A DNA stretch of 64,000 bases. It comes from Octopus bimaculoides (taxonomy: Eukaryota). Every line of letters begins with the position of its first letter. Position 1 is the stretch's first letter. Both the position numbers and the translations under genes were made by a program. This document shows positions 10,764-64,000 of this stretch, piece after piece. The notes below the pieces were generated by a model that saw only the letters and a list, made by a program, of their open reading frames with translations, ran no database searches and had not been told where the DNA came from. The stretch lies in the NCBI RefSeq assembly GCF_001194135.2, contig NC_068987.1:93880784-93944783 (forward strand), given 5' to 3'.

Positions 10764-11928
10764 TATTTCATAAATATTTGCCATAAAGGCATTACAAAGA
10801 GGGGACGAACAAGGACAGACAAACATAAAAGGATGAAGTAGCTGTAGTGATTAAAAAATTAACGATTTATAAATACAATAATTTGATTATATTTACAATG
10901 TTCGATTAAAGCATTGCTCATTACAGATGCAATTTGTAATGGCTTTCCTGAAGGATAGGCTTCCGACCACCAGGGTAGACCCCTTGCTTTTTCTTTCCTT
11001 TTTTTTTGTTTTGCCTTCCACTTACCTGGTGCCAAACACTCCCAGCTTCCTCGCCACAGGTTTCCATCTTCTCATGAATCTGTCTCGTGACAGATACCTC
11101 TTCTCCAGCCTGATCTTACTACTGAGGTAGTAACAAAAAAAGTTAACTAACCCCTGGCCAGATACAAAGGTATCCGTCACTATGCCTCTTACNNNNNNNN
11201 NNNNNNNNNNNNNNNNNNNNNNNNNNNNNNNNNNNNNNNNNNNNNNNNNNNNNNNNNNNNNNNNNNNNNNNNNNNNNNNNNNNNNNNNNNNNNNNNNNNN
11301 NNNNNNNNNNNNNNNNNNNNNNNNNNNNNNNNNNNNNNNNNNNNNNNNNNNNNNNNNNNNNNNNNNNNNNNNNNNNNNNNNNNNNNNNNNNNNNNNNNNN
11401 NNNNNNNNNNNNNNNNNNNNNNNNNNNNNNNNNNNNNNNNNNNNNNNNNNNNNNNNNNNNNNNNNNNNNNNNNNNNNNNNNNNNNNNNNNNNNNNNNNNN
11501 NNNNNNNNNNNNNNNNNNNNNNNNNNNNNNNNNNNNNNNNNNNNNNNNNNNNNNNNNNNNNNNNNNNNNNNNNNNNNNNNNNNNNNNNNNNNNNNNNNNN
11601 NNNNNNNNNNNNNNNNNNNNNNNNNNNNNNNNNNNNNNNNNNNNNNNNNNNNNNNNNNNNNNNNNNNNNNNNNNNNNCCGAGAGAGTAGCTGAAGTGCTT
11701 AGTGGCACTCCAATTGCCAGTCCCCCAGCGTAGATCTCTGCTTGATCCAATTACCGATGTCCGTTAAGGACGTTAATTTCGGGAGGTAGAACCGGACGTG
11801 CGGTGACCACACCTGCTCTCCATCCAGGTAGAGCCAGAGGTGCTTCAGCCTTAACGCGAATTTTCGCATCCTCAGCCAAGGCATCTCTAGCCCACCCTTC
11901 AGCGGTTTCTGGCAGCAGACAGAGCGCT

Positions 11929-12960
11929 TCACAAGTGGCTTCCCTCCCTTCCAAAAAAGCGGAAAAGGATTCTTTCCAACTTGTTCATCCACAAATTTGG
12001 GCACGGCACCACGGTCAGATAGTAGGTGATAACCGATGCTATAAACATTTGCACCGGGATAGCACACGTTTGCGCTTCCCCGACAAGTTTGTCCACGACC
12101 CACGCCAACCTTTTCTCTAGCACCTTGACCAAAATCTTTAACTCTGTGTTCAGCAGAGTTATGGGCCTGAAGTTCCCTATTTCGTCCCCCTTGCTCGGGT
12201 CCTTCCTAATCAACGTCACCACCCACCGCCTCGCAGACTTGGCAATTCTCCCATCCTGCTGCCAATTGGCATAGACGCTGGCCAGCAGGCGCACGAACAG
12301 GTCTGGCATACTGTTGTAGAATTGGTAAGGCAGACGATCAAGACCCGGCGACTTCTCCCCAGGGCATTCACCTAGTACCTCGATCACCTCCTCGGTCGTG
12401 ATCGGCCCCTCACAGCATTCCTCCTCTCGGGCCGAGAGACGCGGACCACCAGACAAGAAGTCCCTAAGGGCCTCGCCATGATACAGCGCCCCACCACTCC
12501 TGAACAACTCGGCAACGTGCTTGTGAAGCGCCTTGCACATCTCGTCCCGTCCATCGACCGAACACATATTATCATCGACAAGAGACCTAATTGTGGCATC
12601 ATTGCCACGCTGGGTTTCTACCGTAAGGGCCCATCCGGCAACATTAATTCCCTCACGGCCCAATGCGCGCACTTTAGCCCAAACTCTGCACCCCTCCTGT
12701 TTGGCTTTGAGGTGACGGTCCATGGCCGGTCTCGCTGCCAAAATGTGAGATGCAGAGCCCAACCTCAACGCCTCCTCTAGGTCCTTAACTAGTTGCCCTT
12801 CTAGTCTAGCCTTATCTAATCTTAGCTGACGGCCAAACCTAATAGACTCAAAACGAATGGCTCTCTTAAGAGCGAGCCACCATCGGTTGTTAACCACACC
12901 ACCGGTTAACGCCCTCTGTACTAACCCCTTAATCCGGCTGCGGTATGCCTCGCAAGTCAA
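11929..12960 (-). pseudogene. LINE ORF2 reverse transcriptase N-terminal part fused to post-RT region
   Basis: KSPGLDRLPYQFY...NFRPITLLNTELKILVKVLEKRL...QTCAIP runs directly into VQMFIASVITYYLTVVPCP. No KAFD, QG or YADD motifs are present. Confidence 0.9.
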
Positions 12961-13078
12961 AATCCTCTCTTAACTATACTATCAACGTCCAGTGTACACT
13001 TGACCATTCTATGGTCAGTGTAAGCTACTTGAACGAGCTCTGGACAGCTAAAACTAGGCTTATCTCGAATGCTTATCA

Positions 13079-13684
13079 CTATTCTAAGTAAGATTTGAAC
13101 CTTCCGTCGCCACTCATCCAGGTCCACGCTTGGACGTTCGGATGGGCAAGTCTGTAACGATCTGCCAGCTGAAAAGGCTTAAGCAGATCTACGAGACGTG
13201 AATTTACTTTCCTATGGATCGAGTCAAAGCTATCGATGCGCGCATCAACGATAGCATTATAGTCTCCTAACACCACTAATGTTTTCGACGTCACGAGAAA
13301 GTTCTCTAGGCGCCGATAAAAATCAGTTTGAAATCCTCTAGCACAAGGTGCATAGATCCCGATCAACCTGAAGGCCTTACTGTTGTATGTCACATCAAAG
13401 ACGACGAACCCACCTTCTGGGTCTACATAGACTTTACTTGTCTGCAGAGCCAAGCCTTTTCGAACCAGTACTACTACACCCCAACGCCCTCCGGTCCAGC
13501 TAGAAGACATGATTTTCTCGTAGTCATTCAGGAGAAGCGAGAAGGCTTGTAGACTGTCCAGCTTGGTCTCTGTAGCAACCATCACATGCATGTCGTGTGA
13601 TCTGAGGTCGTCGAGGAAACAAGCTTGCTTCCACTTCGAGCTAAGACCACGCACATTCAAACACCCAAGGTTAAGTGTAGTCAT
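13079..13684 (-). pseudogene. LINE ORF2 apurinic-like endonuclease domain
   Basis: MTTLNLGCLNVRGL...ATETKL...IGIYAP...VLGDYNAI...WTW...SYL, with a frameshifted AYTDH downstream. These are the standard APE/EEP motifs of L1/Tx1 ORF2. Confidence 0.92.
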
Positions 13685-17424: not shown

Positions 17425-17836
17425 ATTATAAAATCTACGAACCTTGTGGAATACAGCTACTCATGATGTCTTGGTCGAAATATTAATTCATGTCGCTATG
17501 TATCAAGTTATTAAAGGCAACCAGACGGCTTGTTAACTGAGTTTGGTGCAGTTGACGTTTGAAAAAAAATGTGCGTTTAGAAAAAGATAGAGAGAAAAAC
17601 ACGGGATAGATAATCAACACCACAGCAAACATAGCTAATGTCTTACGGATATCAAAATTACATGGGCCAGAGTGGAATGGTTTATGATGTGCCCGGTGTT
17701 CTATCTTTACTTGTCGCTAAGAAGCATTTTTCAAAATGCAGACATAAAGAAAAGAGCGCGTTCCTGGAATTTGCAGTCACAGTTTTCGAGGGGAAGTATC
17801 AGACATTTTATTGACCCGATAATATAGAGTTAGGTC

Positions 17837-17990
17837 CATCATTTACATTATTTATATTTGACAGATTTTTGTCCTCATCTTGTTTGTTGTTACCATAACG
17901 TATCGGCTGGGTATATCAGCCGAAACGTGGTGTTAACAACAAACAAGATGTGGACAAATATCCGTCAAATGTAAATAATGTAAATAATGT
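17837..17990. repeat. Long imperfect palindrome (~72-bp arms), probable Penelope-like inverted pLTR remnant
   Basis: catttacattatttatatttgacagatttttgtcctcatcttgtttgttgttacc...cggctg | ggtatat | cagccgaaacg...aacaacaaacaagatgtggacaaatatccgtcaaatgtaaataatg. Confidence 0.8.
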
Positions 17991-18053
17991 ACATCATTCC
18001 TCATCTCTTAAATATACAACTGTATAGATTTGGGTCTTAGAAAAGTTCTTAGT

Positions 18054-40555: not shown

Positions 40556-41370
40556 ATGGAAGTCAGTACAACGATGAGAATAAGTATTGCACATTAATGA
40601 GATAGAAAAAGGAAGATTAAGTTTTACCTCAGCTGATGGCTAACAGCATCTTTTACCAAAACCATTTCACCTATGTCTCCTTTCAGTTAAATGCACTACA
40701 AATCCTCTTCGCAGAAATGAGTCTAATGAGACGACCTATCAAATGGTGACATTTATTTCATGATTTCGCGTTGCGATGTTCTGTTATTAGATTTGGTTCC
40801 GTTGAGATCAGCTTCAGAATGACATTCTTTTACAAGTTAAAAACACGACGGGTTACCACAACTTGAATTTCGTCTCCATTTTGCTTATTTAATGCAATTG
40901 TCTTCAAAATGCTTCGAAGCATTGACTATGTTTTCTTCTCTGAAATGTCCATTCAATTGTAATTGCCTGCAAAATTCTACATAAAAGTGTTTCTTAACTG
41001 CGGTCCATACATTTGGTAAAACATTGAAGACATTTTGTTAAAATTTATGAGCAATAAGTTGTTTATATTTCTACAACACAATATTTTAACAATTAGTTTT
41101 AAACAATACATAATTATATCTAATTATAAAATACGATAGGATGTTTTTAAACATCGAAAGATTTTGAGGATTCAATCGAATAAAATAGGAACCAAAGGTG
41201 GATGAGGGCCACTGATCCGCATCAATGTCTCTTTTTCTCAGGTGAGATTTAATCTATTTGTATTATCTTAACTTTGACTTTTATCGGACTTCTCCTCCTT
41301 AGAACAAGATATATGTGAGTTAGGGAGCGCCGCGCACGTGTGAGTATTCAATTGCAGTTTGACTATGCTG

Positions 41371-41427
41371 TCCATAACTTAAAGTTTCGTGTGCGAATAG
41401 GATACGTCCATTTCATCAGATGATGGG
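41371..41427 (-). ncRNA. Decayed type I hammerhead, inverted partner of 41452-41507
   Basis: Minus strand reads CAU CUGAUGA A augg...cac GAAAC UUUAA GUU / AUGG. Core is intact; stem II is damaged. Confidence 0.6.
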
Positions 41428-41451
41428 AACATCTGTCGAATCAGATACGCC

Positions 41452-41507
41452 CCGCATCTGATGAGGTGGACGTGTTCTGCGCACCCACGAAACTTTAAGT
41501 CATGTGG
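41452..41507 (+). ncRNA. Type I hammerhead ribozyme, complete
   Basis: Stem I CCGCAU (41452-57) pairs with AUGUGG (41502-07). CUGAUGA at 41458-64, extra G, stem II GUGG/CCAC with inner GUG/CAC, GAAA at 41489-92, C-UUUAA-G, and GUC triplet at 41499-41501. Confidence 0.85.
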
Positions 41508-41562
41508 AAAATAGTCAGACTATTATAAAAATATATGTAACTCTTACCAGATGTTTTGGGTA

Positions 41563-43246: not shown

Positions 43247-44237
43247 NNNNNNNNNNNNNNNNNNNNNNNNNNNNNNNNNNNNNNNNNNNNNNNNNNNNNN
43301 NNNNNNNNNNNNNNNNNNNNNNNNNNNNNNNNNNNNNNNNNNNNNNNNNNNNNNNNNNNNNNNNNNNNNNNNNNNNNNNNNNNNNNNNNNNNNNNNNNNN
43401 NNNNNNNNNNNNNNNNNNNNNNNNNNNNNNNNNNNNNNNNNNNNNNNNNNNNNNNNNNNNNNNNNNNNNNNNNNNNNNNNNNNNNNNNNNNNNNNNNNNN
43501 NNNNNNNNNNNNNNNNNNNNNNNNNNNNNNNNNNNNNNNNNNNNNNNNNNNNNNNNNNNNNNNNNNNNNNNNNNNNNNNNNNNNNNNNNNNNNNNNNNNN
43601 NNNNNNNNNNNNNNNNNNNNNNNNNNNNNNNNNNNNNNNNNNNNNNNNNNNNNNNNNNNNNNNNNNNNNNNNNNNNNNNNNNNNNNNNNNNNNNNNNNNN
43701 NNNNNNNNNNNNNNNNNNNNNNNNNNNNNNNNNNNNNNNNNNNNNNNNNNNNNNNNNNNNNNNNNNNNNNNNNNNNNNNNNNNNNNNNNNNNNNNNNNNN
43801 NNNNNNNNNNNNNNNNNNNNNNNNNNNNNNNNNNNNNNNNNNNNNNNNNNNNNNNNNNNNNNNNNNNNNNNNNNNNNNNNNNNNNNNNNNNNNNNNNNNN
43901 NNNNNNNNNNNNNNNNNNNNNNNNNNNNNNNNNNNNNNNNNNNNNNNNNNNNNNNNNNNNNNNNNNNNNNNNNNNNNNNNNNNNNNNNNNNNNNNNNNNN
44001 NNNNNNNNNNNNNNNNNNNNNNNNNNNNNNNNNNNNNNNNNNNNNNNNNNNNNNNNNNNNNNNNNNNNNNNNNNNNNNNNNNNNNNNNNNNNNNNNNNNN
44101 NNNNNNNNNNNNNNNNNNNNNNNNNNNNNNNNNNNNNNNNNNNNNNNNNNNNNNNNNNNNNNNNNNNNNNNNNNNNNNNNNNNNNNNNNNNNNNNNNNNN
44201 NNNNNNNNNNNNNNNNNNNNNNNNNNNNNNNNNNNNT
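43247..44237. other. Largest assembly gap (N run); about 17 gaps in total
   Basis: N runs, for example 3317-3741, 7974-8395, 10337-10577, 11193-11678, 19148-19673, 21026-21411, 24565-24899, 31817-32163, 34888-35431, 37252-37623, 50863-51487, 54330-55080 and 58146-58920. Confidence 0.98.
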
Positions 44238-44884
44238 GAGAAAGGAGTTTCAAAAAATTCACATGATCTGAATTTTTTCCCTCATAACTTACTGGAAGAT
44301 GGCCATCTTTTAATGAAAAATTATAGAAATTCCTTTCAAACGGCATAGATTACGATTATAAAGAAATTCATGGGAAAATGGTTTTCGCGAATTTTCCCCA
44401 TTTTTTTAAACCACAGTCTTCGAAATGATTGGGTTGGGTGGGGGCATCTTTGTATGAAAAATGTTTCGAAAACACTTTTTTTTTACACCCCACTCCCTTA
44501 TCATCCTACTCTGGACCTATTTTGGACAATTTTTTTTTTTTGCACTTCAAGACCATGGGAAGAGCATTTTCGGTAAAAATATTTGAAAAAATTGTTAATA
44601 TTTTCAGAGGTTAAGGTGAGTGATTTAAGGGTGATTTGACTGTTGTTTCTAGCGCATCTAAAGACAACTCTCCTCGTTTCTTTACTACTCTCCCTTGTAT
44701 TGATGTTTTTCAATATTTCTTCCCCATAAAAATATTTATATACTATAAAAGAGAAAATTTGAGAAACTATGAATTTTGTGCAACCCCACTTCCTACCTCC
44801 GATGGTTTCTGTTTAGAAATAACAAATATTGGAGAGCCTGAGAAGGTCATGGTCGACATTTTTCCTCAGTGATTTTAAAAAGTA

Positions 44885-45116
44885 CGGAGATGTACTTGCA
44901 GGGCAAGTGACTTCATCTGAGGTCATGTGCTAAAACAAAAACAATTGCAGCCTGGAAGATGTTTTTAAACCATTCAAGAACACACAAAAACCGTTAGGTT
45001 CACTTCAACATTAAGACTTCATTTCTGTCAAAATATTTTCGTCGCTTTGAATCTGCGACTTGTTCACTGACAAAACTTCACAAAAGTGATGCAGCGCAAA
45101 GTTTTGTCAGTGAACA
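44885..45116 (-). mobile_element. Probable Penelope-like pLTR remnant carrying the variant hammerhead and a 17-bp inverted repeat
   Basis: gttcactgacaaaactt (45062-45078) and aagttttgtcagtgaac (45099-45115) are exact reverse complements. The flank tacttgcagggcaagtgac...aaaccgttag is one I recall as a common octopus repeat. Confidence 0.6.
45023..45075 (-). ncRNA. Type I hammerhead ribozyme variant with G3-C8 core (GUGAACA)
   Basis: Minus strand reads UUUUGUCA GUGAACA A GUCGC-agauucaaa-GCGAC GAAA AUAU UU / UGACAGAA. Stems I and II pair fully and stem III is the palindrome AAUAUU. Confidence 0.75.
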
Positions 45117-45992
45117 TCACAGACACAAGCACGCACGCACGCACGCACGCGCATCCACTCACACACATTCATTAATTTTCATGTGTGTGTATATGTATCT
45201 ATGTGTATACGCGCGAGTGTGTATTGGTGCGTGTGTGTGTGTGTGTATGTGTCACTGTTGAAGTTGTGTTTGGAAACTGTGAATAACGTGCAAGTTTCAA
45301 GTACTTGTCGGTAACCTTTTGTTTTTTCTCCTCGTCTTCTAATAGTAATTACCCAACTTTCTAGCCTCTTCTCACAGCCATCTCGTGTTCAAAAATTATA
45401 CGAGTATAGTAAAAATTTTCATTCAATAAATAATATTCTTGCATTATGTATACACTAATAGCGAATTAAAACTTTAAAGAGGAAGTGAGAGACTTTGCAA
45501 ATGAAAATAGAATGCTCTGCAGTGAATGCAATTAATATTTAAATTTGTGATGAATTGGACGCAATGAATTTTTAAATTTGTGAGAAATCGGAGTTTAAAA
45601 AATTCAATAAACCTGAGAAATCGATATTATAGGCAATTTGTTAGAACATGAATTTATAAAACTATTTCCAGACGGTCAACCCTTTAATAATTGTTTTCTT
45701 TAAGTACTTTTGGTAACTGTTACATACCTAATTAATAAGCAGCTTTCTCCATTATAGTATAGATATGGGTGTATATATGTATATATATGTATGTGTGTGT
45801 GTGTGGAGGGGGGTGCGAAGCCTAATCGTGTTTATCTGCATCCCTATGGCCATACCAAGACTCCTGAATTCCTTTTACTTTAATCCGTGGACATAGTCTT
45901 CGATGAAGATTTCAGAATTTTAATTCGAATCAGCTGAGCACTACTACCTGTTTTCTATTTTGAGCATGTCTAGTTTTCACCTTTTGAGTCTC

Positions 45993-59544: not shown

Positions 59545-60567
59545 GTTATCAACATTATTGGAGAAGGTTCCCGACCTTATCGAGCTGCCCAACGGAGCAC
59601 AACTCCAAGTTGTGGTGGAGGGCAGAAAACCAAGGTGCCACACTTGGGGGCCTAACACACTTTTGAAGGCCCTCTGCCCGCAACAACAACAACAAAATAG
59701 AGCTCAAGGAACGGTGGCTCTGCTACCACCACCACCATCACAAGAAGGCCAAAAGCTTTAACAATAATCAACGCATCGACAGCCATTAAAGAAACATTTT
59801 CAGCAGCAGATTCCCACCACCACTATGGTACCAACGACTGTAGCGGGGGAAACAAGCAGCGCCCGACCTTCCCTACAGACGGGCGACACAGATACACCAT
59901 GTACGCCCGACACTGTCTATTCAGAAGTCGTATCATCCAAGAAGGATTTGTGTTGGGGAGAGGTTATGTGGAACAGCTGCAATCACGTGTGGGACGGATC
60001 CGTCTGTCAGTCGAGTCTGTAGTGATGATTGCCCCATTGCCCTCCTTCAATCGGGCCGGCAAGGCAGTTATCCTTTGCCTGGCGGCTGTAACAAAACAAG
60101 TTGTTTGATGGATAAGGCTGAAAGACATGAGCACAGATACATTCCTCTTTGGTAGAGCTCTCATTGACTTCTTCAAGTTTCACTTGAAAAGGAAATTGAG
60201 AGTGGAGAGCGAAGTGCTGTCCTCGAGTGAGTTTACTGAAAGGTGGGTGAAAGTTGTTAAAATGGCAAGTGTTGGATGGTTCCACTCTAAGTGTAGACCT
60301 GTGAGTCGGAGAGAAGGAAATGGAGAGAGCACTTATTCTTGAAGTTTCAAGGAAATCTTGGGCAGTGGGGTTCCTCCATTATCCCTAGAGATCTTCCTGT
60401 ATCAGGAGCTCCACATCTCTATAATCCTCCCCACCGTTTTTTTTAAAACTTTTGTATGCTATGCATATGTCCCTTCGTTTTCAGTGTATACCTTGTATAC
60501 ATTCTTTCTTTCATTTTTTTCTTATCATTTCATTATATGTAAACCCCCACACTTTATGTCTGTCTTT
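59545..60567 (+). mobile_element. Tx1-clade LINE derivative: ORF1 fragment joined to ORF2 C-terminus and 3' UTR
   Basis: VPDLIELPNGAQLQVVVEGRKPRCHTWG...LKALCP (knuckle-like), then from about 59965 YVEQLQSRVGRIRLSVESVVMIAPLPSFNRAGKAVILCL...FGRALIDFFKFHLKRKLRVE. The 3' UTR matches 880-987. Confidence 0.85.
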
Positions 60568-61549: not shown

Positions 61550-62326
61550 AAATAGTAGGGAGATGTGATAGGCGTTTCACCCTTATTTCTAAAGAGGCTC
61601 ATCTCATTGATTGGCATTATATTTTGGTTTCTGCTGTGCAAAAAATGTTGTGCGGTGTGTCTATGTTTGTGTCTGTTTGTATAAGTGTATGTATGTGCAT
61701 CTGTATGTATGTGAGCGCATGCGTGTGTTTCGAAGGAAGTAAAGTGAAAATGGTTTAGGAAAGAGAATTTAACTGGGTATGTGTAGTGCCGGAAGTCGAC
61801 TGCTATCACTCTGTATCATACACAGTAAACAACATTTAGAAGACTTGAAATAAAACACAGGCAAGAAAACACATTACAACAGCAGCAACAACAACAACAA
61901 CAACAACACTATCACCACCGCCACCAACAGCAACAACAACAACAACAACAGTAACGACAATAGTAAAGTTAAAAATAAAGAAATAGAAGATATAAACAGT
62001 TAATTTAATAAGAAATGAAATTAGGGAGAATCCTTATAGATTGTTTAATTCTATTCCCAACACAACTTATCTACATGATCACTGCTTTATGGCAAATCCT
62101 TTTCTTTCTTTTATTCCTATATTGCTCTTGAATTGTTTAATTCTTTCTTTCTTTATTTTTTTTGTCTGTTTTTGCTTTCTTTATTCCAAGGTTTCCTTTT
62201 CTTTTCCCCGCTACATTTTTATCGTATTTTTATTTTTCTGAGCTTATTTTTTCTTCCCTGGTGCATTTAACTTCCCTTTATACATGGAAGAATTTCAATT
62301 CTCACACAATCGGCTGCTATCTATCA

Positions 62327-62382
<56 letters not shown>

Positions 62383-62398
62383 GATCTATCTATCTATC

Positions 62399-64000
62399 TG
62401 ATAGTAGTTTATGCACCGTCTTTAACAGGCCGGCCAGATTTCTATCGACGTCTAGAGGTTTTCTTGGGAACGTCTCGACCTTTACTTCTAGTGGGGGATT
62501 GGAACGCTACCCTGGACACGCATCTAGATTACGCAGGCAGCAATAGCAATAGAATGGGATGCAAAAACCTCAAAGACCTGCTCAGACGTTTCCAACTGTC
62601 TGACAGGTACCGACTGGACCACCCGAATGTGCCAATGTGGACATGGAGTAACCGCATCGGGTCGTCCAGATCGTACTTAGATAGGGTATTCTGTAGGACA
62701 GTGGATAAGAATAGAGTAGGTTGTCCACAATTCCACATAGTCAGCTACACAGACCACAAATTTGTCACTTGTACGCTTGACGTAGATAAGACACATAGAC
62801 AGGGTCCCGGTTACTGGAAGCTGAACGCGTCGTTCACGGCACGCCAGGCTTACAGGGACCGGATTAGCACTTTAGTTAAGAGAGCATTAACGGGTGCCAT
62901 CATCAACAACAGATGGTGGTATGCCCTCAAAAAAGCAATCAAGTCAGAATCGGTTAGGTACAGTAAGGCCCTAGCGTTAGACCGAAATAGAATAGAGGGA
63001 GACCTAGTTAAGAAATTAGAAGAGGCACTTAGTACTGGCATCGCGTCCAACGTAGTGGCAGCGAGGTTGGCCCTCGACCAACATTTCAACGCCAAACACG
63101 AAGGATGTGTTGTCAGAGCTAGGATGCGTGCTCTGAGGGAGGCCCGAGTAGCGGAGGCGCAACGAGGCAACAGAGCCACCATTAGGTGAAGGGTGCAAAT
63201 TACTCGAGCCTGAAAGGATGTGCGAGGCCTTTCAACAGCGCTTTGCCCGACTGTTCGGGACAACTGGTGGGTCAGAACGCAGAGTAGACTTTAGTGCCTA
63301 CCTGCATGGCCTGCCACGACTCTCAGCAAGAGAGGCGGAGTGTTGTGAAAGACCCATCACAGCCGCGGACGTACGGGATGCGATGGCAGGCTGTAAGGGA
63401 GACAAGTCGCCAGGCTTGGATGGTCTGCCCTACGAACTTTATTGTCATATGCCAGACTTGTTTGGAAGCGTCTTGGCAGCTGTCTACTGCAAATGGCAGC
63501 AAAACGGGAGCATCCCCGTCTTCGTAAAGCGAGGAGCAGTGGCACTACTAAAGAAAGACCCAAACGAGGGGAACATCATAAATAATTTTCGGCCCATCAC
63601 TCTACGCAGATTTGAAAATTTTGGCCAAAGTGTTAGCCGAGAGGTTGGAGCATGTCATCGAGAAAATAGTCGACAGGGCGCAGACGTGCGCCGTGCCGGG
63701 TAGGAATATCCATAACAACCTCCATCTGATCCGCTACATCATGGGCAAGGTAGTTAAGGAACCTGGCATGGGTGGGGCGCTGATCAATTTGGATCAATCA
63801 AAAGCTTTCGATAGGGTAGACCATCACTACTTGGAAGCCGTCCTCATAGCGGCTGGTTTCGGTCCCGTCTTCCGCGGTTGGATCGCTGCCTTATACAGCG
63901 GCATCCGCTCGGTAGTTTGCGTAAACGGTCATCTATCCAGACCTTTCAGCATCATGCGTTCGGTTCGTCAAGGATGCCCGCTCTCGGCCCTTCTGTATGT
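62399..64000 (+). mobile_element. Tx1-clade LINE ORF2 (endonuclease C-half and RT), 5'-truncated, continues beyond the window
   Basis: VYAPS...VGDWNATL...WTW...SYLDRVF...YTDH...GPGYWKLN, KSPGLDGLPYELY, NFRPITL, QTCAVPGRNIHNNL, LDQSKAFDRVDH, VRQGCPLS. Contains frameshifts and small deletions. Confidence 0.93.

What the first reader, a model, noticed from the sequence alone, without database searches (positions are those of the whole stretch)
45023..45075. Hammerhead ribozyme with a compensatory G3-C8 core swap (GUGAACA instead of CUGANGA)
Seen: the minus strand folds as a type I hammerhead. Stem I UGUCA/UGACA extends to 8 bp with one G-U, stem II GUCGC/GCGAC is perfect and followed by GAAA, stem III is the palindrome AAUAUU, and the predicted cleavage follows UUU (between 45031 and 45030). 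The left core strand reads G3 U4 G5 A6 A7 C8 A9. Known: C3-G8 is a Watson-Crick pair in the active hammerhead core, and compensatory G3-C8 double substitutions restore activity in engineered ribozymes. Inference: both positions changed in exactly the compensatory way while all stems stay paired, which suggests a natural covariant that CUGANGA-based searches miss. I recall this repeat being high-copy in octopus, so it may be a family-wide trait. I do not know whether it has been reported.
Basis: partly seen in the sequence, partly recalled or inferred. Interest (0 to 1): 0.9.

Follow-up and report, generated by a model that had tools for sequence, protein, structure and literature searches.

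The report
Hammerhead-like relic with swapped core pair
A 53-base stretch in what looks like an octopod genome has the shape and nearly all conserved letters of a retrotransposon-type hammerhead ribozyme, but with its core C-G pair flipped to G-C; it is probably a fossil of such an element, and neither cleavage nor a repeat family could be shown.

Summary
The motif is real at 45075..45023 (minus strand): helix I of 8 bp, helix II of 5 bp, GAAA, the AAUAUU palindrome and a core reading GUGAACA.

It is rarer than chance: 0.002 per shuffled window for equally good stems with any N3/N8, 0 of 4000 for G3/C8, and 0.01 per decoy core in the real sequence. [quoted passage not shown] A canonical CUGAUGA hammerhead-like inverted pair lies 3.5 kb away.

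Against an active or family-wide ribozyme:
- No Rfam hammerhead hit, even at E<=10.
- No second copy in the window or in any searchable collection.
- No tandem partner for the dimer this architecture needs.
- U17 at the cleavage site.
- The 5' half sits in a 35-bp hairpin about 20 kcal/mol more stable than the hammerhead fold.

Natural 3-8 covariation (U3-A8) is already published, and the engineered G3-C8 swap is partly active.

Most likely this is a retroelement-derived hammerhead fossil that inherited G3-C8 (about 0.55). A chance look-alike inside a foldback repeat is about 0.3. Interest is moderate.

The parts
45023..45075 (-). Whole hammerhead-like motif (type I, minimal helix III)
   Evidence: Direct reading. 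It is the minimum-energy fold of the isolated RNA and one of only two descriptor hits in the window.
45068..45075 (-). Helix I, 5' strand UUUUGUCA
   Evidence: Pairs with 45030-45023 (8 bp, one G-U). It is also part of the 3' arm of the long hairpin.
45061..45067 (-). Left core strand GUGAACA (G3 = 45067, C8 = 45062) in place of CUGANGA
   Evidence: Direct reading. The same GTGAACA occurs in the opposite arm of the inverted repeat at 45110-45116 on the + strand.
45060..45060 (-).
   Evidence: Direct reading; the descriptor needs ins = 1. [quoted passage not shown]
45041..45059 (-). Helix II GUCGC/GCGAC (G10.1-C11.1 closing pair) with loop AGAUUCAAA
45032..45040 (-). G12 A13 A14, then AAUAUU (A15.1..U16.1), a palindrome that cannot form a stable hairpin alone. 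The palindrome extends to AAAAUAUUUU (45039-45030).
   Evidence: Direct reading. A short palindromic helix III is typical of metazoan type-I and PLE hammerheads thought to act as dimers (PMC4209133).
45030..45031 (-). Predicted scissile bond after U17 (45031 | 45030)
   Evidence: Position by hammerhead numbering on the sequence. No cleavage data exist.
45023..45030 (-). Helix I, 3' strand UGACAGAA
45044..45082 (-). 3' arm of a 35-bp hairpin / inverted repeat. It contains helix I 5', the left core and helix II 5'.
   Evidence: Fold of 45044-45130(-): -43.6 kcal/mol, z = -7.1. The perfect 18-nt inverted repeat is 45061-45078 / 45099-45116.
45095..45130 (-). 5' arm of the same hairpin. On the + strand it is a head-to-head partial second copy (AAGTTTTGTCAGTGAACA..) that runs into a microsatellite.
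45128..45252 (.). (CACG)n / (TG)n microsatellite abutting the inverted repeat
   Evidence: Sequence; TRF row 45182-45252.
41442..41521 (+). Context: hammerhead-like motif with a canonical core (CUGAUGA G GUGG..CCAC GAAAC UUUAA GUC|AUGUGG at 41452-41507); one arm of an 80-nt head-to-head inverted pair
   Evidence: Descriptor hit. Rfam Hammerhead_HH9 13.9 bits, E 0.3-0.84, below the gathering score of 52. Inverted repeat, alignment.
41356..41435 (-). Context: diverged inverted copy of the same element (CAU CUGAUGA .. CGAAAC UUUAAGU U|AUGG)
   Evidence: 74% identity between the arms; CUGAUGA and CGAAACUUUAAGU are kept in both.

Best explanation
The motif is a fossil of a retroelement-borne minimal type-I hammerhead, of the kind carried in the pseudo-LTRs of Penelope-like elements (PLEs) and scattered as solo copies in many animal genomes.

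Inferred history: it was laid down as a short head-to-head inverted partial duplication next to a microsatellite. Both arms carry GTGAACA, so its source sequence already had G3-C8 instead of C3-G8. The swap is therefore probably a true compensatory state inherited from a hammerhead lineage, not two random hits in this copy.

Inferred mechanism: as RNA, the minus strand could form helices I and II round the core. It could complete helix III only by pairing its AAUAUU palindrome with a second copy, and would then cut after U17 (45031|45030). The rate should be reduced, given that the engineered G3-C8 swap is only partly active and that U17 is, from memory, a poor cleavage-site nucleotide.

At this locus it is most likely inert. 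There is no partner copy, there is no element ORF, and the 5' half is locked in a 35-bp hairpin whenever the upstream arm is transcribed.

Shown: the sequence, the folds, the rarity against null models, and the match to published PLE-hammerhead traits. Inferred: descent from a hammerhead element, G3-C8 in the source, and any catalysis.
For: - All core positions other than 3 and 8 are canonical (U4 G5 A6, A9, G12 A13 A14, A15.1, U16.1, H17), with 8-bp and 5-bp helices.
- The motif is rare under null models: 0.002 per shuffled window for equal stems with any N3/N8, and 0 of 4000 for G3/C8. Decoy cores on the real sequence give 0.0105-0.021 per decoy, against 1-2 hits for the true core.
- The same window holds a canonical CUGAUGA..CGAAAC..GUC motif, also in a head-to-head inverted pair with its 5' end about 10-14 nt from the repeat axis. 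Dual motifs on opposite strands, and solo motifs taken to come from truncated PLEs, are described for PLE hammerheads.
- Cephalopod genomes carry hammerheads and Penelope elements: 235 Rfam hammerhead_1 hits in the giant squid (PMC6962438). The window is octopod-like, since the best named hit of its LINE fragment is from Argonauta hians.
- Natural 3-8 covariation exists as U3-A8, and C3G/G8C partly restores cleavage in a PLE hammerhead.
- Both inverted-repeat arms read GTGAACA.
Against: - No Rfam hammerhead model reports the motif, even at E<=10 on 81 nt.
- No other copy exists in the window, and none was found in the metagenome scan, the prokaryote-genome scan or the protein collection. Neither family membership nor conservation of G3-C8 is therefore shown.
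- There is no PLE reverse transcriptase or GIY-YIG remnant in the flanks.
- The two hammerhead-like loci share no sequence beyond the core.
- A third foldback repeat of similar geometry at 17827-17999 has no hammerhead, so the inverted-repeat context is not specific to hammerheads.
- One decoy core also gave a strong-stem hit in the real sequence (59841-59779), so the shuffles understate chance.
- The + arm of the repeat lacks helix II 3' and GAAA.
Confidence: 0.55

Rival explanations
1. Chance look-alike. The real feature is a foldback (inverted) duplication of about 35-40 bp beside a microsatellite. It could be a MITE-like or replication-slippage product, and if transcribed a hairpin that feeds small-RNA pathways. 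The downstream 20 nt happen to complete a hammerhead-shaped hairpin with an 8 x 10 internal loop.
For: - The hairpin is by far the strongest structure here: -43.6 kcal/mol, z = -7.1, and 20-23 kcal/mol better than the hammerhead fold in context.
- Without a real helix III, the 'hammerhead' is topologically just a hairpin with an internal loop.
- Other non-hammerhead foldbacks exist in the window (17827-17999).
- One decoy core produced an equally strong hit in the real sequence.
- No Rfam hammerhead hit and no relatives found.
- In a genome of a few gigabases, the shuffle rate implies a handful of chance G3/C8 hits.
Against: - The per-window expectation is 0.002 (any N3/N8), or about 1e-4 for G3/C8.
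- The motif additionally shows the 9/10.1 nucleotide, G10.1-C11.1 and palindromic helix III of PLE hammerheads. By my rough estimate these together have a chance probability well below 1%.
- The hairpin arms are not among the octopus miRNA sequences in the held supplements of PMC9699675, and the hairpin reaches only sub-threshold scores on miRNA models.
Confidence: 0.3
2. One reading: a living, high-copy octopus repeat family whose hammerheads carry G3-C8 family-wide and self-cleave (as dimers), and which CUGANGA-based searches systematically miss.
For: - Everything listed for the best explanation.
- U3-A8 families with about 1,300 hits were missed by the standard descriptor in Schistosoma until they were found by homology.
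- G3-C8 is catalytically competent to a degree.
Against: - Only one copy in 57 kb of non-N sequence.
- No tandem arrangement.
- No relatives retrievable.
- The cleavage-site nucleotide is U17, which I recall as one of the least active NUH triplets (own knowledge, not checked here).
- PLE min-HHRs themselves cleave poorly in vitro and can need the element's protein.
- The 'recalled' high copy number rests on nothing testable here.
Confidence: 0.2
3. A decayed copy of an ordinary CUGANGA hammerhead in which C3->G and G8->C arose independently and neutrally after insertion.
For: Canonical hammerhead relics exist in the same window and are old (74% identity between the arms), so mutated cores are expected in this genome.
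Against: - It needs two specific transversions at exactly the two paired positions, while about 10 other core positions and 13 helix pairs stay intact. My rough estimate is 1e-5 per relic.
- Both inverted-repeat arms already carry G3 and C8.
Confidence: 0.05

Closest known systems
Minimal type-I hammerheads of Penelope-like retroelements (min-HHR; Cervera & de la Pena 2014, PMC4209133)
   Same: - Type-I topology.
- An extra nucleotide between A9 and G10.1.
- A G10.1-C11.1 pair.
- A very short palindromic helix III that implies dimeric action.
- Occurrence as a solo motif and in head-to-head pairs.
- Precedent for covariation at 3-8 (U3-A8) within this group.
   Different: - The core pair is G3-C8, which that paper does not report.
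- There is no PLE ORF or pseudo-LTR in the flanks.
- No family of copies could be shown.
- H17 is U.
Canonical metazoan type-I hammerheads (Rfam Hammerhead_1 RF00163 / HH9 RF02275; Schistosoma, newt and amniote intronic motifs)
   Same: Three-way junction order, U4 G5 A6 .. A9, G12 A13 A14, A15.1-U16.1 and the NUH site. The neighbour at 41451-41510 aligns to the HH9 consensus.
   Different: The candidate scores below reporting level on every Rfam hammerhead model. It has G3-C8, an inserted A, an 8-bp uninterrupted helix I and no recognisable loop1-loop2 contact.
Natural U3-A8 hammerhead core covariants (Perreault et al. 2011, PMC3088659; Cervera & de la Pena 2014)
   Same: The C3-G8 pair is replaced by another Watson-Crick pair with the rest of the core intact.
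   Different: U3-A8 keeps pyrimidine-3/purine-8, whereas G3-C8 inverts it. From memory of Przybilski & Hammann 2007 (paper not held), some hammerhead contexts tolerate any Watson-Crick pair and others prefer Y3-R8.
Engineered C3G/G8C double mutants (Martick & Scott 2006; PAc Poseidon element, PMC11167929)
   Same: Identical core change. The single mutants are dead and the double mutant partly restores cleavage.
   Different: Those are laboratory constructs. This is a genomic sequence with no activity data.
Foldback / hairpin repeats and pre-miRNA-like hairpins
   Same: A 35-bp near-perfect hairpin with a 12-nt loop. It gets sub-threshold hits to miRNA models through shape alone.
   Different: No match to a curated miRNA family at its gathering score, and the arms are not in the octopus miRNA supplements that are held. 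A hairpin alone does not explain the hammerhead core letters downstream.

Membership tests
Hammerhead ribozyme (Rfam clan CL00010) | Helices I and II flanking the core in type-I order | tested here: met
   8-bp helix I and 5-bp helix II. This is the minimum-energy fold of the isolated 53/81-nt RNA.
Hammerhead ribozyme (Rfam clan CL00010) | Conserved core letters C3 U4 G5 A6 N7 G8 A9 / G12 A13 A14 / A15.1-U16.1 / H17 | tested here: not met
   Nine positions match, but C3 is G and G8 is C. The 3-8 Watson-Crick pair is kept in inverted form, and one extra A follows A9.
Hammerhead ribozyme (Rfam clan CL00010) | Score at or above the gathering threshold of a curated covariance model | tested here: not met
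   No hit at the gathering score on the whole window. No hammerhead hit at E<=10 on 701 nt or on 81 nt.
Hammerhead ribozyme (Rfam clan CL00010) | Helix III closing the junction | tested here: inconclusive
   Only AAUAUU is available, which makes no stable hairpin (one search leaves it unpaired). Pairing between two copies is possible in principle, but the two-strand minimum-energy fold was not examined for that helix.
Hammerhead ribozyme (Rfam clan CL00010) | Site-specific Mg2+-dependent self-cleavage | not testable with these tools
   Needs in vitro transcription assays or end-specific RNA sequencing.
Hammerhead ribozyme (Rfam clan CL00010) | Homologues with compensatory changes in the helices | tested here: inconclusive
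   No homologue found in the window, metagenome contigs, prokaryote genomes or the protein collection. The source genome itself could not be searched.
PLE-type minimal hammerhead (Cervera & de la Pena 2014) | [quoted passage not shown] | tested here: met
   A at 45060; criterion quoted.
PLE-type minimal hammerhead (Cervera & de la Pena 2014) | G10.1-C11.1 base pair | tested here: met
   G 45059 pairs with C 45041; criterion.
PLE-type minimal hammerhead (Cervera & de la Pena 2014) | Palindromic 15.2-16.2 and loop 3 | tested here: met
   A15.1 A15.2 U A U16.2 U16.1 = AAUAUU; criterion.
PLE-type minimal hammerhead (Cervera & de la Pena 2014) | Location in a pseudo-LTR of an element encoding RT plus GIY-YIG endonuclease | tested here: not met
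   No such ORF remnant lies between 41.5 and 46.7 kb. The only RT/endonuclease fragments in the window are LINE-type, at 11.7-13.7 kb and 62.2-64 kb. The paper notes that most motifs are solo and presumed to come from truncated elements.
PLE-type minimal hammerhead (Cervera & de la Pena 2014) | Membership of a genome-wide consensus family rich in covariation | not testable with these tools
   No access to the source genome. Only 21 kb of Argonauta hians could be fetched, and it shows only chance-level core matches.
PLE-type minimal hammerhead (Cervera & de la Pena 2014) | A second motif in tandem or nearby (<50 kb) to allow dimers | tested here: inconclusive
   A canonical-core pair lies 3.5 kb away, but it is unrelated in sequence and its helix III palindrome is different. 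There is no tandem copy.
microRNA precursor / hairpin RNA | Match to a curated miRNA family, or a listed cephalopod miRNA | tested here: not met
   Best hit is 26.1 bits against a gathering score of 79 (mir-3479). The arms are absent from the held supplements of PMC9699675.
microRNA precursor / hairpin RNA | Stable hairpin of pre-miRNA size | tested here: met
   35 bp, 12-nt loop, -43.6 kcal/mol. This is shape only and gives no evidence of processing.

The most novel reading that the evidence does not exclude
Octopod genomes harbour a lineage of retroelement-borne minimal hammerheads whose catalytic core uses G3-C8 instead of C3-G8 across the family, and which still self-cleave in dimeric or protein-assisted form. 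That would be the first natural purine-3/pyrimidine-8 hammerhead, and it would mean that CUGANGA-anchored descriptors and the Rfam models undercount hammerheads in animal genomes.
Probability: 0.25. Interest if true: 0.55.

Novelty: new variant of a known kind. Interest (0 to 1): 0.38.

Why it matters
If genome-wide copies confirm it, this would extend the known natural variation of the hammerhead core. Only the U3-A8 covariant has been reported in nature so far, and G3-C8 would be the inverted purine-pyrimidine arrangement.

It would give a natural test case for how the 3-8 pair's orientation affects positioning of G8 in catalysis. It would also show that standard motif searches (CUGANGA descriptors, Rfam models) miss a class of retroelement hammerheads.

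As it stands, the evidence is one fossil copy with no activity data. The practical value is a cheap, well-defined follow-up: one genome BLAST and one descriptor run.

Tried and rejected
**Rfam**
- The gathering-score scan of the whole window gave nothing.
- E<=10 scans round the candidate gave only hairpin-shaped miRNA and snoRNA noise and no hammerhead.

**Looking for a repeat family**
- blastn of 44601-45500 against the window found only microsatellite hits and the local inverted repeat.
- Searches with up to 3 mismatches for each half of the motif found only the motif itself.
- TRF found no tandem array.

**Looking for relatives elsewhere**
- The 20-mer scan of metagenome contigs gave one hit (L001) with unrelated flanks.
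- The 20-mer scan of prokaryote genomes gave one hit in an Acidobacteriota MAG, also with unrelated flanks.
- The 45-aa stop-free frame across the motif, used as a translated probe against 5.8 billion proteins, returned no candidate.
- Exact-protein look-ups of two window ORFs, meant to reach the source assembly, were not on record.
- The only octopod DNA I could reach was 21 kb of Argonauta hians.

**Element context**
- No PLE ORF lies near the motif.
- ARAGORN found no tRNA or tRNA-like SINE head.

**miRNA idea**
- The hairpin arms are not in the held supplements of the octopus miRNA paper.

**Other scans and sources**
- A relaxed descriptor without a helix II requirement gave only chance-level noise: 8 sites against a decoy mean of 3.6 and maximum of 10.
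- The foldback at 17827-17999 was examined as a possible third hammerhead relic and rejected. It has GAUGAGGAC..GUC and CGAAAC boxes, but in the wrong order and with core mismatches, and no Rfam hit.
- The supplements of the Naiad/PLE paper are not held, and Przybilski & Hammann 2007 is not held.

Full report
**What is there**

On the minus strand, 45075..45023 reads UUUUGUCA GUGAACA A GUCGC AGAUUCAAA GCGAC GAAA AUAUU U|UGACAGAA.
- Helix I has 8 bp with one G-U.
- Helix II has 5 Watson-Crick pairs and is followed by GAAA.
- The palindrome AAUAUU follows.
- U17 is at 45031.
- The left core strand is G3 U4 G5 A6 A7 C8 A9.

The isolated 53-nt RNA has this structure as its minimum-energy fold (-14.0 kcal/mol, z = -3.4). 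The same holds for an 81-nt piece.

- An extra A (45060) lies between A9 and helix II.
- 'Stem III' cannot close on its own.
- The supposed repeat unit 44885-45116 has no second copy in the window.

**Is it more than chance?**

I wrote a descriptor that fixes only U4 G5 A6, A9, GAAA, U16.1 and H17. It leaves N3, N7 and N8 free, allows 0 or 1 nucleotide before helix II, and asks for at least 4 bp in helices I and II. It finds two sites in the whole window, both strands: this one, and a site with a canonical core at 41452-41507.

| Null model | Condition | Rate |
|---|---|---|
| 4000 dinucleotide shuffles | Lenient descriptor | 0.25 per window |
| | Helix I>=6 and II>=4, any N3/N8 | 0.039 per window |
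| | Helix I>=8 and II>=5, as here, any N3/N8 | 0.002 per window |
| | G3/C8 with I>=6 and II>=4 | 0.00225 per window |
| | G3/C8 with I>=8 and II>=5 | 0 in 4000 |
| 95 decoy cores on the real sequence | I>=6 and II>=4 | 0.021 per decoy (true core: 2) |
| | I>=8 and II>=5 | 0.0105 per decoy (true core: 1) |

The decoy cores have the same letters in permuted order. I used them because shuffles destroy the hairpins of real DNA. One decoy did give an equally strong hit.

So the motif is unusual for one window. In a genome of a few gigabases, though, the same rates predict a handful of chance G3/C8 look-alikes.

**What the databases say**

No Rfam family reaches its gathering score anywhere in the window. 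At E<=10, on 701 nt and again on 81 nt, no hammerhead model reports the candidate. The canonical-core neighbour at 41451-41510 aligns to the Hammerhead_HH9 consensus (CUGAUGAG..CGAAAC..GUC) at 13.9 bits, far below the gathering score of 52.

**Surroundings**

The candidate's 5' half is the 3' arm of a long hairpin. 45044-45082 pairs with 45095-45130 through 35 bp round a 12-nt loop (-43.6 kcal/mol, z = -7.1), and 18 of those pairs form a perfect inverted repeat (45061-45078 / 45099-45116). This hairpin uses up helix I 5', the whole GUGAACA strand and helix II 5'. With the upstream arm in the transcript, the hammerhead fold is 20-23 kcal/mol worse than the minimum-energy fold.

Read as DNA, the + arm is a head-to-head partial second copy (AAGTTTTGTCAGTGAACA-TCACAGA-CAA) that then runs into a (CACG)n/(TG)n microsatellite. 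It carries the same GTGAACA but has no helix II 3' strand and no GAAA.

At the locus there is no tandem repeat, no tRNA-like sequence, and no reverse-transcriptase or GIY-YIG remnant within several kilobases.

The window is a gap-rich (7,235 N), AT-rich, microsatellite-rich eukaryotic scaffold. It holds LINE-type endonuclease/RT fragments, and the best named relative of one of them is from the octopod Argonauta hians.

**The neighbour at 41.4 kb**

41356-41435 and 41442-41521 are 80-nt head-to-head inverted arms, 74% complementary and 6 nt apart. Each carries CAUCUGAUGA .. CGAAACUUUAAGU. The + copy has a 6-bp helix I, a bulged G before helix II and a GUC site. This is what the literature describes for hammerheads of Penelope-like elements: solo motifs or dual motifs on opposite strands, presumed to come from truncated elements (PMC4209133).

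**Comparison with what is known**

By my rough estimate the three together have a chance probability well under 1% in this base composition. This is the main reason I place descent from a hammerhead above chance.

The same paper, and Perreault et al. 2011, report natural covariation of the 3-8 pair, but to U3-A8. Engineered C3G/G8C partly restores cleavage, including in a Poseidon PLE hammerhead, where cleavage also needed the element's protein and was dispensable for insertion in vitro (PMC11167929). A G3-C8 variant is also mentioned as active in a G17 context (PMC3884650).

I found no report of a natural G3-C8 hammerhead and no paper on octopus hammerheads. The giant squid genome paper lists 235 Rfam hammerhead_1 hits and Penelope elements.

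**Weighing the explanations**

- *Neutral decay of a canonical copy.* This needs two specific transversions at exactly the paired positions while the rest of the core and 13 helix pairs stay intact. Both repeat arms already have G3 and C8. I rate it about 0.05.
- *Chance inside a foldback.* This stays serious, at about 0.3. The hairpin is the dominant structure. A hammerhead without helix III is topologically only a hairpin with an internal loop. Another foldback of like geometry (17827-17999) has no hammerhead. No relatives could be found.
- *A retroelement-type minimal hammerhead fossil whose source already carried G3-C8.* This explains the rarity, the three PLE traits, the head-to-head arrangement shared with the canonical neighbour, and the shared GTGAACA in both arms. 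I rate it about 0.55.
I rate it about 0.2-0.25.

**Function at this locus**

Even if the lineage was catalytic, this copy is probably inert, for four reasons:
- It has no partner for the dimer that a palindromic helix III implies.
- The cleavage triplet is UUU. This is allowed by the NUH rule, but I recall it as among the slowest triplets (own knowledge, not checked here).
- AAUAUU offers only six A-U pairs.
- The 35-bp hairpin forms first if transcription starts upstream of 45095.

**Limits**

None of the collections I could search holds the source genome. Two 20-mer scans gave only chance hits. A translated probe gave nothing. Exact-ORF look-ups were not on record. The only octopod DNA I reached, 21 kb of A. 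hians, is uninformative.

The decisive test, a genome-wide search for copies and a G3/C8 descriptor run against decoys, therefore remains to be done.

**Verdict**

- The family-wide and activity claims are unproven.
- If real, it would be a new variant of a known kind, because natural 3-8 covariation and engineered G3-C8 activity are already known.
- Interest is about 0.38.

Noticed in passing
window 41356-41521 (arms 41356-41435 on the - strand, 41442-41521 on the + strand): A head-to-head inverted pair of hammerhead-like motifs with canonical cores. The + copy reads CCGCAU CUGAUGA G GUGG..CCAC GAAAC UUUAA GUC|AUGUGG, and the - copy is diverged with a GUU site. The arms are 74% identical. Rfam HH9 scores 13.9 bits, below threshold. 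It looks like a relic of a Penelope-like-element hammerhead. No Rfam gathering hit flags it.
   Followed up: partly
window 17827-17909 / 17917-17999: An 83-nt-arm foldback inverted repeat (84% complementary, 7-nt spacer) with the same geometry as the 41.4-kb pair. It contains CGAAAC and GAUGAGGAC..GUC boxes, but in the wrong order for a hammerhead and with core mismatches. No Rfam hammerhead hit; nature unknown.
   Followed up: partly
window 11702-13684 (- strand) and 62242-64000 (+ strand): Two non-LTR (LINE-type) retrotransposon fragments with an Exo_endo_phos endonuclease domain and the start of an RT domain. The best named relative of the first is a hypothetical protein of Argonauta hians (49% identity), which points to an octopod source for the window.
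   Followed up: partly
window 45044-45130 (- strand): The 35-bp hairpin folds better as minus-strand RNA (-43.6 kcal/mol) than as plus-strand RNA (-35.1), because its two mismatches are G-U on the minus strand. It would be a Dicer-sized substrate if transcribed. It is not among the octopus miRNA sequences in the supplements I could read.
   Followed up: partly
whole window: Seventeen N gaps (10-990 nt; 7,235 N in all) and very dense (CA)n, (TA)n and (CTAT)n-type microsatellites. One 990-nt gap (43247-44236) lies between the two hammerhead-like loci, so anything joining them is unseen.
   Followed up: no
window 59779-59841 (- strand): A decoy-core scan (GUA in place of UGA) produced a hairpin with an internal loop, 9-bp and 8-bp helices, in the hammerhead geometry. 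It shows that real sequence yields such shapes more often than shuffles suggest.
   Followed up: no
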